Positions 2,797-35,254 of a stretch of DNA of 44,741 nucleotides are shown here, in pieces. Source of the stretch: Octopus bimaculoides (Eukaryota); NCBI RefSeq assembly GCF_001194135.2, contig NC_068981.1, positions 9,216,576 to 9,261,316 on the forward strand, given 5' to 3'. Both the position numbers and the translations under genes were made by a program. Within the stretch, counting starts at the first letter, position 1; each line of letters starts with the position of its first letter. Under the pieces are notes generated by a model, which was not told the origin of the DNA, made no database searches, and was given only the letters and a program-made list of their open reading frames with translations.

Positions 2797-3606
2797 NNNN
2801 NNNNNNNNNNNNNNNNNNNNNNNNNNNNNNNNNNNNNNNNNNNNNNNNNNNNNNNNNNNNNNNNNNNNNNNNNNNNNNNNNNNNNNNNNNNNNNNNNNNN
2901 NNNNNNNNNNNNNNNNNNNNNNNNNNNNNNNNNNNNNNNNNNNNNNNNNNNNNNNNNNNNNNNNNNNNNNNNNNNNNNNNNNNNNNNNNNNNNNNNNNNN
3001 NNNNNNNNNNNNNNNNNNNNNNNNNNNNNNNNNNNNNNNNNNNNNNNNNNNNNNNNNNNNNNNNNNNNNNNNNNNNNNNNNNNNNNNNNNNNNNNNNNNN
3101 NNNNNNNNNNNNNNNNNNNNNNNNNNNNNNNNNNNNNNNNNNNNNNNNNNNNNNNNNNNNNNNNNNNNNNNNNNNNNNNNNNNNNNNNNNNNNNNNNNNN
3201 NNNNNNNNNNNNNNNNNNNNNNNNNNNNNNNNNNNNNNNNNNNNNNNNNNNNNNNNNNNNNNNNNNNNNNNNNNNNNNNNNNNNNNNNNNNNNNNNNNNN
3301 NNNNNNNNNNNNNNNNNNNNNNNNNNNNNNNNNNNNNNNNNNNNNNNNNNNNNNNNNNNNNNNNNNNNNNNNNNNNNNNNNNNNNNNNNNNNNNNNNNNN
3401 NNNNNNNNNNNNNNNNNNNNNNNNNNNNNNNNNNNNNNNNNNNNNNNNNNNNNNNNNNNNNNNNNNNNNNNNNNNNNNNNNNNNNNNNNNNNNNNNNNNN
3501 NNNNNNNNNNNNNNNNNNNNNNNNNNNNNNNNNNNNNNNNNNNNNNNNNNNNNNNNNNNNNNNNNNNNNNNNNNNNNNNNNNNNNNNNNNNNNNNNNNNN
3601 NNNNNN
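2797..3606. other. Assembly gap flanked by (GT)n and (AC)n microsatellites
   Basis: Run of N. This is the largest gap in the window. Confidence 0.99.
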
Positions 3607-6325: not shown

Positions 6326-6420
6326 NNNNNNNNNNATATATATATATATATATATAGTGTACTGTTCCTTGATGGTAAGATCCACAAAAAAGTCCTCCGC
6401 CTGGTGAGAGATAAATGTTA

Positions 6421-14904: not shown

Positions 14905-14945
14905 TTACGGTTCGTTCATGAAATCCTCCAAGTAAAGAAGTCTTT
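14905..14945 (-). CDS. AIRIM: AIRIM terminal coding exon (ERLLYLEDFMNEP*)
   Basis: Acceptor ttctttgtttttcag|, phase 1 compatible with exon 3. Aligns with the recalled human C-terminus DILLNVSFFLEE. The total CDS is 603 nt, or 200 aa. Confidence 0.75.
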
Positions 14946-18059: not shown

Positions 18060-18605
18060 AGTAAGAGAAAATGCCGTCAGAGTGTAAGTATCTTGAGAGA
18101 AAAGCTGAACATTAGAAGCATCAGTTGTGGCATGCAAGAGAGACGATTGCGCTGGTATGGACATGTGGTGAGAATGGAGGAGGATAGCTGCGTGAAAAAG
18201 TGCCACACCCTAACAGTTGAGGGAACCCGTGGAAGAGGTAGGCCCAGGAAGACCTGGGCTGAGGTGGTGAGGCAAGACCTTCGTACATTGGGCCTCACCG
18301 AGGCGATGACTACTGACCGAGACCTTTGGAAATGTGCTGTGCGTGAGAAGACCCGGCAAGNNNNNNNNNNGGCACATAAAAGACACCATTTCGAGCGTGG
18401 CCGTTTTCGTGCGGGTGACACGTAAAAGCACCCACTACACTCTCTGAGTGGTTGGCGTTAGGAAGGGCATCCAGCTGTAGAAACTCTGCCAAATCAGACT
18501 GGAGCCTGGTGTTGCCATCCGGTTTCACCAGTCCTCAGTCAAATCGTCCAACCCATGCTAGCATGGAAAGCGGACGTTAAACGATGATGATGATGATGAT
18601 GATGC
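18060..18605 (+). mobile_element. Young RTE LINE 3' end
   Basis: Intact ORF end (RRLRWYGHV..VEGTRGRGRPRKTW..DRDLWK), 3' UTR and (GAT)n tail. Confidence 0.9.
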
Positions 18606-18869: not shown

Positions 18870-18985
18870 CTTGGATTTTATTGATGACTTTAGTGTCATC
18901 AAGTAACCAGGATTTGAGAAGTTGCTGCAGGATTGACACATCACCATATTTCATTTCATCAAGTAAATATTTCTTGAGGTGTAGC
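18870..18985 (-). CDS. AIRIM: AIRIM coding exon 3 (LHLKKYLLDEMKYGDVSILQQLLKSWLLDDTKVINKIQ)
   Basis: Follows the U12 branch site TTCCTTAAC (19003-18995). KYLLDEMKYGD..L.K.W aligns to recalled human KYLLSSIQWGD..LPKAW. Donor CAAG|GTTAGA. The exact 5' boundary is uncertain by a few nt (see findings). Confidence 0.8.
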
Positions 18986-19092
18986 TTAAAATTAGTTAAG
19001 GAAGCAAATTAATAAAGATGCAACTCATTAGTTTAGCTTGCCTGAAATAATCATTTATAAACATACTTTGTTTATACACAACTTCCCCCACT

Positions 19093-19093
19093 C

Positions 19094-19152
<59 letters not shown>

Positions 19153-19195
19153 CATACACACACACATACATACATGCACACACATATATATTACT
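19093..19195. repeat. (TA)n/(CA)n microsatellite inside the U12 intron
   Basis: Direct reading. Confidence 0.9.
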
Positions 19196-19594
19196 TATAA
19201 ATAAATACATCACCAACCAAAATAATAAAAATTGAAATAAATGGTTTCAGACTTCACAAAAGTGAATCCCCTCTTCATGAACTGGCAAAGGCCTATGGAT
19301 AAGGAGAACACCAGTTCAAATACAGCTGTAGGGAACCAGAAAATTACACCAGTACTAAGAAAAATAGAAACATTGAATATGTTCATCTTTTTCACATCTG
19401 TTTCTCCATGCTAACTTGGGAATGGTTATTAAGACATTCTTTTAGTACTGGGTGCCCTTCCTATCACTAACTCTTAGTGTTTTTCAAATAAGGGGCCACA
19501 TATTTCACATGTCTATGAAAGCAAAGTCAGAGGATAATTTGTTGTCAGGAAAATTACAACAAACTACAGTACATGCAGTTCAGTAGTTTTCTTT

Positions 19595-19822
19595 TTTTTT
19601 TTGTGCTGGTCACATAAAAAGCACCCATGCTGGTGTCATGTACAAAGCACTTGTCCTGGTGCCATGTAAAACACACCCAGTACACTTTGTAAAATGGTTG
19701 GTGTTAGGAAGGACATCCAGCCATAAAAAAAACCATGCCAAATCAGACAGCTGGAGTCTGATACAGCTCCTTTGAAACCATTCAACCCATGCCAGCATGG
19801 AAAACAGACGTTAAATGATGAG
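19595..19822 (+). mobile_element. RTE 3' UTR/tail copy
   Basis: aaaagcaccc...ggaaggacatccagc...acgttaaatgatga. Confidence 0.75.
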
Positions 19823-19999
19823 GTTTGGACAAAAGAAAGGGCTGAAACAGGTTTCTTGCTATAGAGGAACTACATGGTTAGAGTGGGTAGGAGTGATCAA
19901 GCATAAGCTGAGTGGGAGTGGTGACAGAAGAACAGGGGATGTGAGAGGGTAGAGGTTGCAAGATTATATGAGGAGAGACTGAGGGATGGTAAGAGATGG

Positions 20000-20760
20000 A
20001 AAGAGGGTGAAGGAGCTGGGGTTCAAATATAATGAATGAAGAATAAAGGTTGAGGACTGGCTGATGATAAATGCACTTCTCTCCATCACAATTTTCCCTG
20101 ACTCGCTGTCTTGCAAATCAAAACACATCAAGCTGTTGGTTCTCACACCACAGAACATTGGCAAACTTCTTCCTTTCTGCTTCACCCCTAGCTAAGTATA
20201 CCTATCCCTTAGATTCTATTCTCACTACCCAAAATAGTTCCCTGTTCCAGTCCTTCCAGGCCCGCTTCTTTGCTCTAATGGCTCTGTCAACTACACAGTT
20301 CCACTACCATGTCACTCCAAGTCTGGTTGGGACTTTGCAACCAGCCACAAATTTGGTCTGTAGCTCTCAATGAGTTGTCTCGTAGGAACTTCCAGTTATC
20401 CGCTATGTTACCTGTCTGTAACTCTTCCTCCTTCTCATTAAATGCTTCAGTTAGGATGTCTCTAAATCTCTGGCTATTCAAAAGAGCCTTAAGCTTCCAG
20501 GTCCTTTTCCAAATTGGCTTGCTTCTTGAAATCCTTCATGCCTGTGGTCTGAAACCACTGACTAATCTATGCTGAGGGATACATTCTTCACCTGGGAAAG
20601 TCTCTGCATTTATGAGCAACCATGAATCTTTCTTTCCGATGAGAATGTAGTCAATCTGGCTAGTATGGTCACCAGATTTATAGGTTATCAGGTGACTGAC
20701 TGGTTTCCTGAAATTATATATATAGCCTCCAGAACCTCAATTTCACCAAGACGGGTGGAT
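20000..20760 (-). mobile_element. Degenerate RTE fragment (endonuclease C-terminus/linker)
   Basis: SQIDYILI..DRKRFMVAHKCRDFPGEECIPQHRLV. Confidence 0.7.
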
Positions 20761-21172
20761 GTATCACTGCTCATCTCTCTATTATGACATGGAGGGCTAG
20801 ATAAATAAGAGGGGACTAAGAATTGAAACACACATACACACGTTTGTATCAGTTTAACCTCATCACTTGAGCTTAAGTCAATCTATTGCAAGTAATCAAA
20901 GCAAATGACATGTTCCTCATTCCTGCAAAGACTGACCTACAGGTGGCCAGGTTATTCATTACACATCAATTTCACCAATCTGGGAGATAATTCTATAGAG
21001 TTCAGAACCAATGGAATATATTTCACTAGCTTATCACTCAATCAGTCATCATAATTGCTTTCCATGTGGACAGGAGTAGACACTAATATTCAATAAATAT
21101 TCACTTGATTTATTCCTTAAAAAAAAAAATGAAGTGATCAATAATGTAAAGAATGAAATCAACAAAGGATAT

Positions 21173-21334
21173 TGTACAAAAACCTGTCTTTCTGTATCAT
21201 CTAACCATTCCAACATGGTAGCCAGAGTTGGGGACATAGCTCTGCTCTCAGTCAAATAAACCATGTCGGGTTTTTGTTCAAAAGCATTGATTCTTGCTTG
21301 ATTCACTTTATCATAAGATTTTTGAAATTCACAT
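21173..21334 (-). CDS. AIRIM: AIRIM coding exon 2 (ICEFQKSYDKVNQARINAFEQKPDMVYLTESRAMSPTLATMLEWLDDTERQVFVQ)
   Basis: Acceptor ttttcatttttag| at 21335/21334, phase compatible with exon 1. SPTLATMLEWLDDTER matches recalled human SPSVADMLEWLQDIER. Ends at the U12 donor CA|ATATCCTTTG. Confidence 0.88.
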
Positions 21335-21489: not shown

Positions 21490-22379
21490 CCAGGGTGAAA
21501 AACTAGAGGTAGTCGATAGCTTCTGCTATCTGGGCGACCAAGTTAGTAGTGGGGGTGGGTGCGCTGAAAGTGTAGCTGCTAGAATAAGAATAGCCTGGGC
21601 AAAGTTTAGAGAGCTCTTACCCCTGCTGGCGACAAAGGGACTCTCACTCAGAGTAAAAGGCAGACTGTATGACGCATGCGTACGAAGAGCCATGCTACAT
21701 GGCAGTGAAACATGGGCTGTAACTGCTGAGGACATACGTAAGCTCGCAAGGAATGAAGCCAGTATACTCCATTGGATGTGTAATGTCANNNNNNNNNNNN
21801 NNNNNNNNNNNNNNNNNNNNNNNNNNNNNNNNNNNNNNNNNNNNNNNNNNNNNNNNNNNNNNNNNNNNNNNNNNNNNNNNNNNNNNNNNNNNNNNNNNNN
21901 NNNNNNNNNNNNNNNNNNNNNNNNNNNNNNNNNNNNNNNNNNNNNNNNNNNNNNNNNNNNNNNNNNNNNNNNNNNNNNNNNNNNNNNNNNNNNNNNNNNN
22001 NNNNNNNNNNNNNNNNNNNNNNNNNNNNNNNNNNNNNNNNNNNNNNNNNNNNNNNNNNNNNNNNNNNNNNNNNNNNNNNNNNNNNNNNNNNNNNNNNNNN
22101 NNNNNNNNNNNNNNCCGGCAAGCCAAGTAAGATCGTTGCCAGTGCCCCTGGACTGGTTCTTGTGCGGGTGGCACATGAGATGCACCATTTCGAGCGTGGC
22201 CGTTTTCGTGCGGGTGACACGTAAAAGCACCCACTACACTCTGAGTGGTTGGCGTTAGGAAGGGCATCCAGCTGTAGAAACTCTGCCAAATTAGATTGGA
22301 GCCTGGTGTTGCCATCCGGTTTCACCAGTCCTCAGTCAAATCGTCCAACCCATGCTAGCATGGAAAGCGGACGTTAAAC

Positions 22380-23461: not shown

Positions 23462-23745
23462 ATTGTGGCTTGAACTGCACACAGTTTTTGTTCTATCTTC
23501 TCCACAATCACATAAAGTAACTTGGATTTTACTTCATTCAGACTAGCAGGGAGCTCTAAAGATTCCACATTTGCTTCATAACAACACTGGTATTGTTCAC
23601 ATAAGTTAAAAAGTTCCTTAAGTTGCACTTCTTGCTGACGAGCACATTCCTGCCACACAGATGCACAATGTTGTACTGCAAGAAATGCATGACGAAGCTT
23701 GCATTTCAAGACTTCGGTTTTTTGAACTTGGACAATGTTTGGCAT
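23462..23745 (-). CDS. AIRIM: C1orf109/AIRIM orthologue, coding exon 1 (MPNIVQVQKTEVLKCKLRHAFLAVQHCASVWQ...LCAVQAT)
   Basis: ATG at 23745, preceded by a strong acceptor (ttttcttttgcag|, exon begins 23756). Donor AT|GTAAGG at 23462/23461, phase 2. Resembles the recalled human C1orf109 N-terminus (LKKCFPVVEEQQGLWQ). Confidence 0.85.
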
Positions 23746-28400: not shown

Positions 28401-30704
28401 AGAGATAAGACTGTAAGGAAGGAATATGTGTAAGATGTGGGCGGATTCAATGGCTGGAATCTGCCGAAAGTTTTCTTGTTTTGGAATTCAGAAAAGTATG
28501 TACAAATAACTTCTTTTGCACACACACATGGTAAAACTTCAGTATGAATTATAAAATTACAGCTCAACATTAATTGAAATGACCTTTTATATATATTTTG
28601 TAATACTTATTTGTGTTGAGTGAATTTAGAAACTTTATCCCACACACCCCCATTTACTTTTTTCCAAAATTTCTTCAGGTTCCTGTTTTCAAAATAGGAG
28701 ATTAGGATTTTGCCCCCAAAAACACGTTTTCAAAATGTTAATAACCCTAACCCTCTCCAGCCCAAATTTTTTATTTTTAACTTTTTCGAAGTTTTTTTTT
28801 CAATCCACATAGAAAAATAGAGATTATGAATTTTAAGAAATTTTTTTTTCTAATTTTTCTTAAAGAAACATTCAAATCCCCTTTCCCAACCTCCACTCAT
28901 TACCTCCAAATGTTTTACTTTTAGCTTTTTTGAAAGCAGGTAAGTTTTGCCCAGAAATAATGTCGTTTAGCTGTTGTTTCTAGCATGTCGGGATTTCTGG
29001 TGGTGGTCTGATATTTTTGACGTCTGCTATTTCAGTAGAATTCTACGCATGCGTGAAACATCAATCGAAAGTTAAACATTTGATTGTTTATTTTTTTGAA
29101 AGCTGAGGTGATGAATGGATGAAGGGGGGGGGCGGAAGGGGCATTGAGTGTTTCTCACAGAAGAATTAAAAGTTTAAAAAATTCCCAGATTCGTAATCTC
29201 TGTATTNNNNNNNNNNNNNNNNNNNNNNNNNNNNNNNNNNNNNNNNNNNNNNNNNNNNNNNNNNNNNNNNNNNNNNNNNNNNNNNNNNNNNNNNNNNNNN
29301 NNNNNNNNNNNNNNNNNNNNNNNNNNNNNNNNNNNNNNNNNNNNNNNNNNNNNNNNNNNNNNNNNNNNNNNNNNNNNNNNNNNNNNNNNNNNNNNNNNNN
29401 NNNNNNNNNNNNNNNNNNNNNNNNNNNNNNNNNNNNNNNNNNNNNNNNNNNNNNNNNNNNNNNNNNNNNNNNNNNNNNNNNNNNNNNNNNNNNNNNNNNN
29501 NNNNNNNNNNNNNNNNNNNNNNNNNNNNNNNNNNNNNNNNNNNNNNNNNNNNNNNNNNNNNNNNNNNNNNNNNNNNNNNNNNNNNNNNNNNNNNNNNNNN
29601 NNNNNNNNNNNNNNNNNNNNNNNNNNNNNNNNNNNNNNNNNNNNNNNNNNNNNNNNNNNNNNNNNNNNNNNNNNNNNNNAAATATTTCCCAGGATGTAAA
29701 CCATTGTGAATGATTAAATAAATTGTCGGTAAACAGTTATAGAAACAGTTTAGCGCCAACAATGGAAGAAGTTACAAAAACTTGTCTAAGAGTGAACTTT
29801 AAATGGGACATGCTTCAAGAGAAATTACTTCGAGAATAGATTTATTGTAACAAGTTTATCACAGTTTGAAATCTGTCGTCCTTTTTGTTTTTCTTTCTTT
29901 CTTTATTAAAATTTGTTGATAAAGAATGAAGATATGAAAAACCAAAGTGGCTAAGATTAATAAACACATTTCGTAATAATGTGGTGCCAGGTTCGATATT
30001 CGATCCCGTTGCGCGACACTCGAGATGGACTGGCTGAACCTTTTGAGAGGAATTCAGAAGTCGGAAACTGTGCGGATACCCATTGCACACGTATGTGTGT
30101 CTGTTGTTGTATAGCATGGAATTATATAAACATCGGCAAAAAAAGCGCGTTACAAGAATGATTCCAGACTCCCTCGTCATTGTTGCCGTCAGGAATATTG
30201 TCAACCAGTAATTTTGAAAACTGCAAGCCACGACTCTATTCTCCAATAATTGAGACACAGAGCATCAAAAATTATCAAGATATTTTCTTAGCAACCTCAG
30301 CCACAATCGGGTCAAAGTTGAGGAAAATGTTTTTGAAAAAAAAAAAGAACCTGTCCCCTATATTTCAAAGAATCTCCGTTGGCGATCTGCAAAGACAGAT
30401 ACCCCCAATAGAATCTATTTTCTCTGGTTCCCAGTTGAAATCTCGTCGCAAAGATTAATGAAATAGAAGTTTAGGCGACTGCTATTATAAATGCGACCTT
30501 AGCTAATAAATTGCCAACGTATTTCTTGAAATAAATAAATAAAAAATAATAAAGTGCCTCGCGTTACGGAAATGTTTTCCTTAAATCTTACTGTTACATC
30601 AAATGTATTTTCCTATTAACTTTTAATATTTTATAGATTTCAGGTGTCAGTAGACAAAATAGGTTTCATTTAACGAAATTTCACGTAAAGCAATTATTAA
30701 TCAG

Positions 30705-33109: not shown

Positions 33110-34255
33110 TCAATTCTTAGCCCACCCTTATTCATCATAGTCCTCCACGCCATAACAGAGGAATTCAAAACTGGGTGCCTGTGGAAACTGCTATATGCTG
33201 ATGACCTTGCTCTTATTGCAGAATTGGGGAAGAAATTCCAAGTATGGAAACAAAACCTGGAATCAAAGGGCTTTTAAGTTAACCTAGCTATGACCAAAGT
33301 TGTAGTTAATAAGAAAGAAGATAAAACTCTCTTTCAATCAGGTAAATGGCCCCTGGTCAATATGTAGGAAAGGAGTTGAAAGAAATTCCATTCACTGCAC
33401 CCAGTGTAAACTATGGATACATAAGAGGTGCAGTGGAATCACAGGTAGATTTTTTTGTATGTGACAGATGTGCAGGAACAATAAGCACTAAGGATGCACA
33501 GGACTTAGACTCTCTCAAAAGCCCAGGAGACTCTCTTGAGGTTGTAGATAGTTTTTCTGTTACCTAGGTGACCAAATTAGCCATGGTGGAGGATGCTCTG
33601 AAAATATTATTTCCAGAATAAGAAGAGGATGGAGGAAGTTCAGAGAGCCGTTACTTCTGTTGGCAACAAAAGGACTCTCTCTTTAAGTAAAAGGTAGATT
33701 ATATGATGCTTTTCGTATAAACGGCTATACTCGATGGTAGTGAGACATGGGCTCTGAATGCAGACGACATGCATAGACTGGAGGGAAATGAAGGGATTGT
33801 GCTCTGTTGGATGTGCAACATCAGTGTGCATGTACGACAAAGTGCAAATGTGTATTGAGAGAAAAGTTGAGCATAAGAGGAATCAAATGTAGCATCCAAG
33901 AGAAGAAGACTACGTTGGTTTGGACATGTGATGCATATGATTGAAGACAGAGGTATAAAGAAGNNNNNNNNNNNNNNNNNNNNNNNNNNNNNNNNNNNNN
34001 NNNNNNNNNNNNNNNNNNNNNNNNNNNNNNNNNNNNNNNNNNNNNNNNNNNNTATGAATGAGGACAGCTGTATAAAGAAGTGCTGATCACTGAAAGTGGA
34101 TGATACCCTGCAGAAGCGGGAGACCCGGGATGAAGTGGTGGGGACCGATTTCAAGATGTTGAGCCTTATGGCGGAAACGACAATGGACTGAGATGTCTGG
34201 TGATGTGAAGTTTTTGAGAAGACCTGTCCATGTCAGTGGAACTGAGTTCTAGAAG
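33110..34255 (+). mobile_element. Degenerate RTE RT-to-3' fragment, right arm of an inverted pair
   Basis: GSILSPPLFIIVL...LLYADDLALIAE. Near-identical to the reverse complement of the left arm over about 33450-33963. Confidence 0.85.
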
Positions 34256-34960: not shown

Positions 34961-35254
34961 CNNNNNNNNNNNNNNNNNNNNNNNNNNNNNNNNNNNNNNN
35001 NNNNNNNNNNNNNNNNNNNNNNNNNNNNNNNNNNNNNNNNNNNNNNNNNNNNNNNNNNNNNNNNNNNNNNNNNNNNNNNNNNNNNNNNNNNNNNNNNNNN
35101 NNNNNNNNNNNNNNNNNNNNNNNNNNNNNNNNNNNNNNNNNNNNNNNNNNNNNNNNNNNNNNNNNNNNNNNNNNNNNNNNNNNNNNNNNNNNNNNNNNNN
35201 NNNNNNNNNNNNNNNNNNNNNNNNNNNNNNNNNNNNNNNNNNNAAATTTTTTTT

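What the first reader, a model, noticed from the sequence alone, without database searches (positions are those of the whole stretch)
18979..21183. AIRIM minor (U12) intron with a non-canonical in-frame AT-AA end and competing acceptors
Seen in sequence: a consensus U12 donor (GTA CA|ATATCCTTTG, 21172) and a consensus branch site (TTCCTTAAC, 19003-18995), followed by taattttAA G ctAC AC ctc. With this phase-2 donor, the AA end (18986) keeps the frame: CA|G CTA CAC CTC AAG AAA TAT = QLHLKKY. That also gives 9 residues between ER and KYLL, the same as the recalled human protein. The canonical-looking AG (18985) and AC (18981, 18979) ends all frameshift into a stop within about 10 codons. In-frame escapes exist: weak U2 donors at 21183 (CAG|GTTTTT) or 21177 (TTT|GTACAA) joined to the AG, with a U2-like branch AACTAAT overlapping the U12 branch, or a donor shifted by 2 nt joined to the AC. 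Established: AT-AA is a rare U12 class, and U12/U2 twintron-like overlaps are known (Drosophila prospero). Inference: output of this ribosome-maturation factor could be tuned by 3' splice-site choice and NMD, or the intron is in U12-to-U2 transition.
Basis: partly seen in the sequence, partly recalled or inferred. Interest (0 to 1): 0.75.

Follow-up and report, generated by a model that had tools for sequence, protein, structure and literature searches.

The report
Octopus AIRIM minor intron, AT-AA ends
The second intron of the octopus AIRIM (C1orf109) gene is an ancient minor-spliceosome (U12-type) intron that in octopuses ends in the rare but already known AT-AA pair; it is a real and tidy example, and public gene models already use this junction.

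Summary
The window is Octopus bimaculoides, and AIRIM/C1orf109 lies on the minus strand. Intron 2 (21172..18986) starts with a perfect U12 donor, ATATCCTTT. It has a perfect U12 branch site, TTCCTTAAC, 10 nt before an AA end. Only the AT-AA junction (21173|18985) reproduces the RefSeq 200-aa protein of O. bimaculoides and O. sinensis, and only it keeps the spacing seen in 38 of 39 AIRIM homologues. The AA is not an assembly error: three Octopus assemblies and Argonauta all read AAG. The intron sits at the same codon and phase as U12 GT-AG introns in human, amphioxus, tick and cuttlefish. A deep-sea snail has GT-AT there, and a scallop has a U2-type intron. The octopod lineage therefore switched an old G-type minor intron to A-type with an AA end. 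No reads could be laid, so isoform abundance, NMD tuning and a U12-to-U2 transition remain untested. Conservation argues against a transition. It is a new member of a known kind, of modest interest.

The parts
23462..23745 (-). AIRIM exon 1 coding part (ATG at 23745); followed by the U2-type donor AT|GTAAGG
21173..21334 (-). AIRIM exon 2 (162 nt), ends ...GTT TTT GTA CA (phase 2)
21164..21172 (-). U12-type 5' splice site ATATCCTTT (A-type); the only copy in the window; identical in O. sinensis, O. vulgaris and Argonauta
21182..21183 (-). Cryptic U2-type donor GT (CAG|GTTTTT), 11 nt upstream of the U12 donor. Used in RefSeq isoform X2 (joined to exon 4) and in the O. vulgaris 196-aa model. Argonauta has AT here.
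21176..21177 (-). Second GT (TTT|GTACAA). The Argonauta annotation uses its equivalent; no Octopus model seen here uses it.
18986..21172 (-). Intron 2, 2187 nt, U12-type with AT-AA termini; the interior is repeats and is not conserved
18995..19003 (-). U12 branch-point sequence TTCCTTAAC; the only copy in the window; TTCCTTAA is conserved in all four octopods
18986..18987 (-). Terminal AA of the intron, the productive 3' splice site, 10 nt after branch-site position 8. It aligns with the AG of the cuttlefish intron.
18979..18985 (-). Alternative 3' ends inside exon 3: AG ending at 18985, AC at 18981, AC at 18979. All frameshift. The 18979 end matches O. vulgaris isoform CAI9715676.
18870..18985 (-). 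AIRIM exon 3 (116 nt), G CTA CAC CTC AAG AAA TAT ...; donor G|GTTAGA
14905..14945 (-). AIRIM exon 4 coding part ((E)RLLYLEDFMNEP, stop TAA 14907..14905), with a strong U2 acceptor tttgtttttcag|

Best explanation
Intron 2 of Octopus bimaculoides AIRIM is an ancient bilaterian minor (U12-type) intron. Inferred mechanism, from established U12 biology: U11 and then U6atac recognise ATATCCTTT, U12 pairs with TTCCTTAAC, and the 3' splice site is picked mainly by its short distance from the branch site. Here that is the AA 10 nt downstream, so the join is CA|G and the full 200-aa protein is made. In the octopod lineage both terminal G's of an ancestral GT-AG minor intron became A's, giving AT-AA. The other junctions are most likely low-level by-products of an inherently slow and error-prone class of intron, or artefacts of canonical-only annotation pipelines. 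These are AT-AC 7 nt downstream, GT(21183)-AG, and GT(21183) joined to exon 4. They are probably not a dedicated regulatory switch.

Shown here: the motifs, the frames, the exact match to public proteins, conservation, and orthology. Inferred: that the minor spliceosome does the excision, and that the AT-AA product predominates.
For: 1. Perfect U12 donor and branch site, each unique in the window and placed exactly at the homology break.
2. Only 21173|18985 reproduces RefSeq X1 of O. bimaculoides and O. sinensis.
3. 38 of 39 AIRIM homologues have no gap between MLEWL and KKYLL. The GT-AG model is 4 residues short, and Pfam scores 36.5 versus 32.1 bits.
4. Human AIRIM aligns without a gap across the junction.
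5. Octopus-Argonauta similarity runs through exon 2 and stops at the last base of ATATCCTTT. It resumes 15 nt before the branch site. The AAG at the 3' end is invariant.
6. Same codon and phase in other species: human TC|GTATCCTTTG with GTCCTTAAC, and amphioxus, tick, cuttlefish and snail U12 signals.
7. Cuttlefish RNA contigs, indexed in 103 blocks of the collection, read ...GCTCA|GCTTTG... Exon 3 starts with GCT in all cephalopods, and the branch-to-end spacing is the same 10 nt.
8. AT-AA is the commonest non-canonical minor-intron type (PMC10639083; PMC1557818).
Against: No RNA reads of any octopus could be examined, so the AT-AA junction rests on RefSeq models and comparative evidence. The O. 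vulgaris annotation carries neither isoform with AT-AA: it has a GT-AG model and an AT-AC frameshift isoform. Its pipeline was EVM plus PASA (PMC10700109). From my own knowledge, PASA accepts only canonical and AT-AC sites. The AT-AC isoform uses the farther AC (18979), which is hard to explain as a simple aligner artefact. No Logan RNA contig of Octopus carrying any of the isoforms was found.
Confidence: 0.85

Rival explanations
1. Regulated unproductive splicing. Octopods tune AIRIM output through competition between the productive AA end, the frameshifting AG/AC ends (stop codons 81 to 89 nt before the last exon junction, so possible NMD targets) and the upstream U2 donor with exon-3 skipping.
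For: Annotated isoforms correspond exactly to AT-AC(18979) in O. vulgaris and to GT(21183)+exon 4 in RefSeq X2. The stop codon positions fit the NMD rule. The human orthologous intron also has two annotated 3' sites 4 nt apart. [quoted passage not shown]
Against: No abundance data. The alternative ends lie in coding sequence, so their conservation says nothing. In Argonauta the second AC is AG and the GT at 21183 is AT. U12 3' site choice is known to be error-prone without regulation (PMC3584512).
Confidence: 0.1
2. The intron is really removed by the major spliceosome as GT(21183)-AG(18985) or GT(21177)-AG(18985), or it is in U12-to-U2 transition, and the U12 motifs are relics.
For: Both junctions are in frame. 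The O. vulgaris main model uses GT(21183)-AG. A scallop has a U2-type intron at this position, so conversion has happened elsewhere.
Against: The products are 4 or 2 residues shorter than the family norm. The donors are weak (GTTTTT, GTACAA). There is no polypyrimidine tract, the acceptor is AAG, and the U2-like branch ACTAAT lies only about 7 nt from the AG. The GT at 21183 is absent in Argonauta, and the GT at 21177 is absent in cuttlefish. The U12 signals are under clear constraint across octopods. RefSeq joins the 21183 donor to exon 4, not to exon 3.
Confidence: 0.04
3. Assembly or consensus error: the true end is AC and this is an ordinary AT-AC intron.
For: The window is a draft assembly with 2000 N's.
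Against: O. bimaculoides, O. sinensis, O. vulgaris and Argonauta hians assemblies all read AAG at this spot. The cuttlefish AG aligns to the same column.
Confidence: 0.01

Closest known systems
Human AIRIM/C1orf109 minor intron (chr1:37683438-37686272, listed as U12 GT-AG)
   Same: Same gene. Same codon (7th after the conserved ER) and phase 2. U12 donor GTATCCTTTG, branch site GTCCTTAAC, short branch-to-3' distance, and two annotated 3' sites 4 nt apart. The gene is listed as a minor-intron gene in PMC6865273.
   Different: The human intron is G-type (GT-AG); the octopus intron is A-type with an AA end.
AT-AA / 'A-type' (AT-AN) U12 introns, e.g. human RASGRP4 and MSH3 (Sheth 2006; de Wolf 2021; Larue and Roy 2023)
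   Same: ATATCC donor, canonical U12 branch site, and a 3' terminal A in place of C. This is the commonest non-canonical minor class.
   Different: Here the state can be polarised. Five G-type relatives at the same position indicate a GT-AG to AT-AA change in octopods, not a one-base change from AT-AC.
U12 subtype switching and U12-to-U2 conversion (Burge 1998; Lin 2010, PMC2831892)
   Same: Orthologous introns differ in subtype across lineages: GT-AG, GT-AT, AT-AA. One lineage (scallop) has a U2-type intron at the same position.
   Different: The literature discusses mainly AT-AC to GT-AG. This case runs from G-type to A-type and changed both ends.
U2/U12 twintrons (Drosophila prospero; dURP/CG3294 in PMC2831892)
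   Same: A U2-type donor lies 11 nt upstream of the U12 donor and is used in an annotated isoform.
   Different: The U2 donor is not conserved (Argonauta has ATT). It pairs with the exon-4 acceptor and gives a frameshifted, truncated product. There is no evidence of two functional, regulated isoforms.

Membership tests
U12-type (minor) intron | 5' splice site [A/G]TATCCTT at the first intron bases | tested here: met
   ATATCCTTT at 21172..21164, 9/9 match, unique in the window
U12-type (minor) intron | Branch-point sequence TCCTTRAY close to the 3' end (about 10-20 nt, optimum 11-13 per PMC3584512) | tested here: met
   TTCCTTAAC at 19003..18995. Its position-8 A is 10 nt from the AA end (11 nt from the first A)
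U12-type (minor) intron | No distinct polypyrimidine tract before the 3' splice site | tested here: met
   CTAATTTTAA lies between branch site and end, read directly. Compare the exon-4 acceptor tttgtttctttgtttttcag
U12-type (minor) intron | Orthologous introns in other species are U12-type at the same position and phase | tested here: met
   Human; amphioxus, tick, cuttlefish, snail, Argonauta and two other Octopus species
U12-type (minor) intron | Excision depends on U11/U12/U4atac/U6atac | not testable with these tools
   Needs a minigene or snRNA knock-down
AT-AA subclass | The mRNA junction implies an intron that starts with AT and ends with AA | tested here: inconclusive
   Exons joined at 21173|18985 give exactly RefSeq X1, and cuttlefish RNA shows the homologous exon join. 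No octopus reads could be laid
AT-AA subclass | The genomic AA is real | tested here: met
   AAG is invariant in four independent octopod assemblies
U2/U12 twintron (prospero-like) | Conserved U2 and U12 site pairs in one intron, both giving functional mRNAs | tested here: not met
   The GT at 21183 is absent in Argonauta. Its annotated use skips exon 3 and frameshifts. The GT-AG product to exon 3 is 4 aa short of the family norm
Alternative splicing coupled to NMD | Premature stop more than about 50 nt upstream of the last exon junction | tested here: met
   81 to 89 nt for the AG and AC ends
Alternative splicing coupled to NMD | Appreciable, regulated use of the unproductive junctions, which are stabilised when NMD is blocked | not testable with these tools

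The most novel reading that the evidence does not exclude
Octopods converted an ancient G-type minor intron of an essential ribosome-maturation factor into an A-type AT-AA intron. They now set AIRIM output by competition between the AA end (productive), AC/AG ends a few nt downstream (frameshift, NMD) and a cryptic U2 donor that skips exon 3. This would make AIRIM dosage a read-out of minor-spliceosome activity.
Probability: 0.1. Interest if true: 0.5.

Novelty: new member of a known kind. Interest (0 to 1): 0.25.

Why it matters
The main value is for annotation and for minor-intron evolution. It is a clean, well-polarised case in which a GT-AG minor intron became AT-AA, with both terminal bases changed. 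A GT-AT state in a snail and a U2 conversion in a scallop occur at the same position. It also shows how canonical-only pipelines mis-model such introns: the O. vulgaris models are 4 aa short or frameshifted, and the Argonauta model has shifted GT-AG sites. It does not open a new mechanism. AT-AA minor introns, subtype switches and sloppy U12 3' site choice are all documented, and RefSeq already carries the correct junction.

Tried and rejected
I did not try to feed read laying with run ids seen elsewhere.
- The first protein search, with the 92-aa exon 2+3 peptide, found nothing because of the word index. The full-length query worked.
It had no record for the mammal-like P0030.
- My first guess that exon 3 was terminal (KIQG*) was wrong; exon 4 was found from the homologues. 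An off-by-4 error in the exon 3 end was corrected.
- Exact look-ups of Met-started partial ORFs for six isoforms, meant to catch Octopus RNA contigs in Logan, found none in the collection.
- Logan contigs L005/L006 proved to be genome-colinear sequence of another octopod, not spliced RNA.
- The profile search with 39 homologues returned only 5 named proteins.
- The two Dietrich and Padgett papers on U12 3' site rules are not held, so I cite them only through reviews.
- Assembly error was rejected. A U2 GT-AG main product was rejected on spacing and conservation.

Full report
**What is there**

On the minus strand the window carries AIRIM/C1orf109. The exon 2+3 peptide hits Pfam PF15011 (CA109-like, 36.5 bits). 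It aligns to human AIRIM in PDB 9gwj without a gap across the junction. The window is 100% identical to Octopus bimaculoides GCA_001194135.2 (L002).

The gene model rebuilt from window coordinates is:
- exon 1: 23745..23462
- exon 2: 21334..21173
- exon 3: 18985..18870
- exon 4: 14945..14905 (stop TAA)

Its translation equals the 200-aa RefSeq protein XP_014777345 (O. bimaculoides X1), which is identical to XP_029639338 of O. sinensis.

**Check of the observation**

Exon 2 ends GTA CA and is followed by ATATCCTTTG (21172 onward). TTCCTTAAC lies at 19003..18995 and is followed by TAATTTTAA|GCTACACCTC. Each 9-mer occurs once in the window, where about 0.6 is expected on both strands. Each lies exactly at the break in protein homology, so chance placement is negligible.

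- The AA end (18986) is in frame.
- The AG end (18985) and the AC ends (18981, 18979) frameshift to stops 7 to 11 codons on. Those stops end 81 to 89 nt before the exon 3/4 junction.
- GT(21183)-AG and GT(21177)-AG are in frame but lose 4 and 2 residues.

**Which junction makes the protein**

The answer therefore rests on four indirect lines.

1. RefSeq X1 in two Octopus species is exactly the AT-AA join. From my own knowledge, Gnomon places non-consensus sites only where alignments support them. I could not inspect that evidence.
2. In an alignment of 39 AIRIM homologues from across animals, 38 have no gap between MLEWL and KKYLL. The nine-residue spacing is therefore the family norm. The GT-AG alternative scores lower on Pfam, 32.1 versus 36.5 bits.
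3. The four octopod assemblies (O. bimaculoides, O. sinensis, O. vulgaris, Argonauta hians) all read ...AAG CTACA... at the 3' end and GTACA ATATCCTTT at the 5' end. Colinear Octopus-Argonauta similarity stops at the last base of ATATCCTTT and resumes 15 nt before the branch site. The rest of the intron matches only dispersed repeats. This excludes an assembly error and shows constraint on the U12 signals.
4. In the cuttlefish Sepia the orthologous intron is CA|GTATCCTTTG ... TTCCTTAGCTTTCTCTAG|GCT (L012). Assembled RNA contigs of a cuttlefish, indexed in 103 blocks of the collection, read ...TATGCTCA GCTTTG.... Exon 3 starts with GCT in all cephalopods, and the branch-to-end spacing is the same 10 nt. 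The cuttlefish AG column is therefore the octopod AA column.

**Orthology and history**

The same codon (the seventh after the conserved ER) and the same phase 2 carry an intron in all the species examined.

| Species | Donor | Branch site and 3' end | Type |
|---|---|---|---|
| Human | TC\|GTATCCTTTG | GTCCTTAAC | U12 GT-AG |
| Branchiostoma | CT\|GTATCCTTTC | TTCCTCAAC ... CAG\| | U12 GT-AG |
| Ixodes (78 nt) | CA\|GTATCCTTTT | TCCCTCAAC ... CAG\| | U12 GT-AG |
| Sepia | CA\|GTATCCTTTG | TTCCTTAGC ... TAG\| | U12 GT-AG |
| Gigantopelta | CA\|GTATCCTTAT | TTCTTTAAC ... CTAT\|G | U12 GT-AT (by the RefSeq protein) |
| Mizuhopecten | AG\|GTAATA | ... GTAG\| | U2-type |

The human entry comes from the datasets of PMC8280824, and the gene is listed as a minor-intron gene in PMC6865273. 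Parsimony makes GT-AG the ancestral state and AT-AA a derived state of the octopod lineage, with both terminal bases changed. Subtype switches and U12-to-U2 conversions are documented phenomena (PMC2831892; PMC3584512). AT-AA is the commonest non-canonical minor-intron type (PMC10639083; PMC1557818).

**The competing sites**

All four publicly annotated proteins can be rebuilt exactly from window coordinates:

| Protein | Length | Junction |
|---|---|---|
| RefSeq X1 | 200 aa | 21173\|18985 (AT-AA) |
| O. vulgaris CAI9715675 | 196 aa | 21184\|18984 (GT-AG) |
| O. vulgaris CAI9715676 | 157 aa | 21173\|18978 (AT-AC, frameshift) |
| RefSeq X2 | 154 aa | 21184\|14945 (upstream GT donor joined to exon 4, exon 3 skipped, frameshift with the stop in the last exon) |

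The O. vulgaris annotation came from EVM plus PASA updates (PMC10700109). From my own knowledge, that pipeline accepts GT/GC-AG and AT-AC but not AT-AA. This would explain why it lacks the AT-AA form.

Its AT-AC isoform uses the farther AC, which a simple forced alignment would not prefer, so a real minor AT-AC product is possible (notebook). The Argonauta model uses TTT|GTACAA ... AAAG|GCC, a canonical pair that is in frame. Octopus has no AG at that place, so that model is best read as a prediction artefact.

The GT at 21183 is the Val codon GTT. Argonauta has ATT there. The human intron also has two annotated 3' sites 4 nt apart. Reviews describe U12 3' site choice as error-prone and alternative splicing around minor introns as rare. 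[quoted passage not shown]

**Mechanism proposed**

The minor spliceosome recognises the donor and the branch site. The 3' site is taken at the AA 10 nt from the branch site, slightly shorter than the reported optimum of 11 to 13 nt. The alternatives lie at 11 nt (AG, a combination said to be disfavoured with an AT start) and at 15 and 17 nt (the two ACs). The other products are most likely low-level slippage, cryptic U2 use or annotation artefacts.

That the minor spliceosome does the work, and that AT-AA predominates, are inferences. The motifs, frames, conservation and orthology are shown.

**Verdict**

The AT-AA reading is well supported and is already embodied in RefSeq. Regulation by site competition or NMD is possible but untested. 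A U12-to-U2 transition is unlikely given the conservation. This is a new member of a known kind, useful as an annotation lesson and as a polarised G-type to A-type switch, but not surprising to a specialist.

Noticed in passing
human chr1:37683438-37686272 (from the datasets of PMC8280824): The orthologous human AIRIM minor intron has two annotated 3' splice sites 4 nt apart: CAG| in XM models and AAAG| in NM_017850. The same intron therefore shows 3' site slippage in human.
   Followed up: partly
L014 (Gigantopelta aegis), intron ending ...TTCTTTAACTCTTGACTAT|GTATCAC: The RefSeq protein of this snail implies GT-AT termini for the orthologous U12 intron, a second non-canonical 3' end at the same position in molluscs.
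   Followed up: partly
L013 (Mizuhopecten yessoensis), AG|GTAATAATG ... GATGTAG|GTAC: The scallop has a U2-type GT-AG intron at the same codon and phase, which suggests a U12-to-U2 conversion in that lineage.
   Followed up: partly
window 19695-19815: A short dispersed, SINE-like repeat inside intron 2. It has ten or more copies, in both orientations, in the 30-kb Argonauta AIRIM locus L004.
   Followed up: no
window 19094-19190: A (TA)32 plus (ATAC)n microsatellite about 90 nt upstream of the U12 branch site.
   Followed up: no
window 18093-18425 (+ strand), in AIRIM intron 3: An ORF with a retrotransposon reverse-transcriptase tail motif (RLRWYGHVVRM...GRPRKTW), interrupted by a 10-N assembly gap at 18361-18370. 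Similar fragments flank the 21789-22114 gap in intron 1.
   Followed up: no
window 2797-3606, 6326-6335, 18361-18370, 21789-22114, 29207-29679, 33964-34052, 34962-35243: Seven runs of N (2000 bases in all), so this is a scaffolded draft. None touches the splice sites discussed.
   Followed up: yes
L005, L006 (Logan contigs of SRR11869384 / SRR11869391): Contigs that carry AIRIM exon 1 with read-through into intron 1 (protein P0006, V7A). They are colinear with the genome at 81-84% identity, so they are another octopod's genomic or unspliced sequence, not mRNA.
   Followed up: partly
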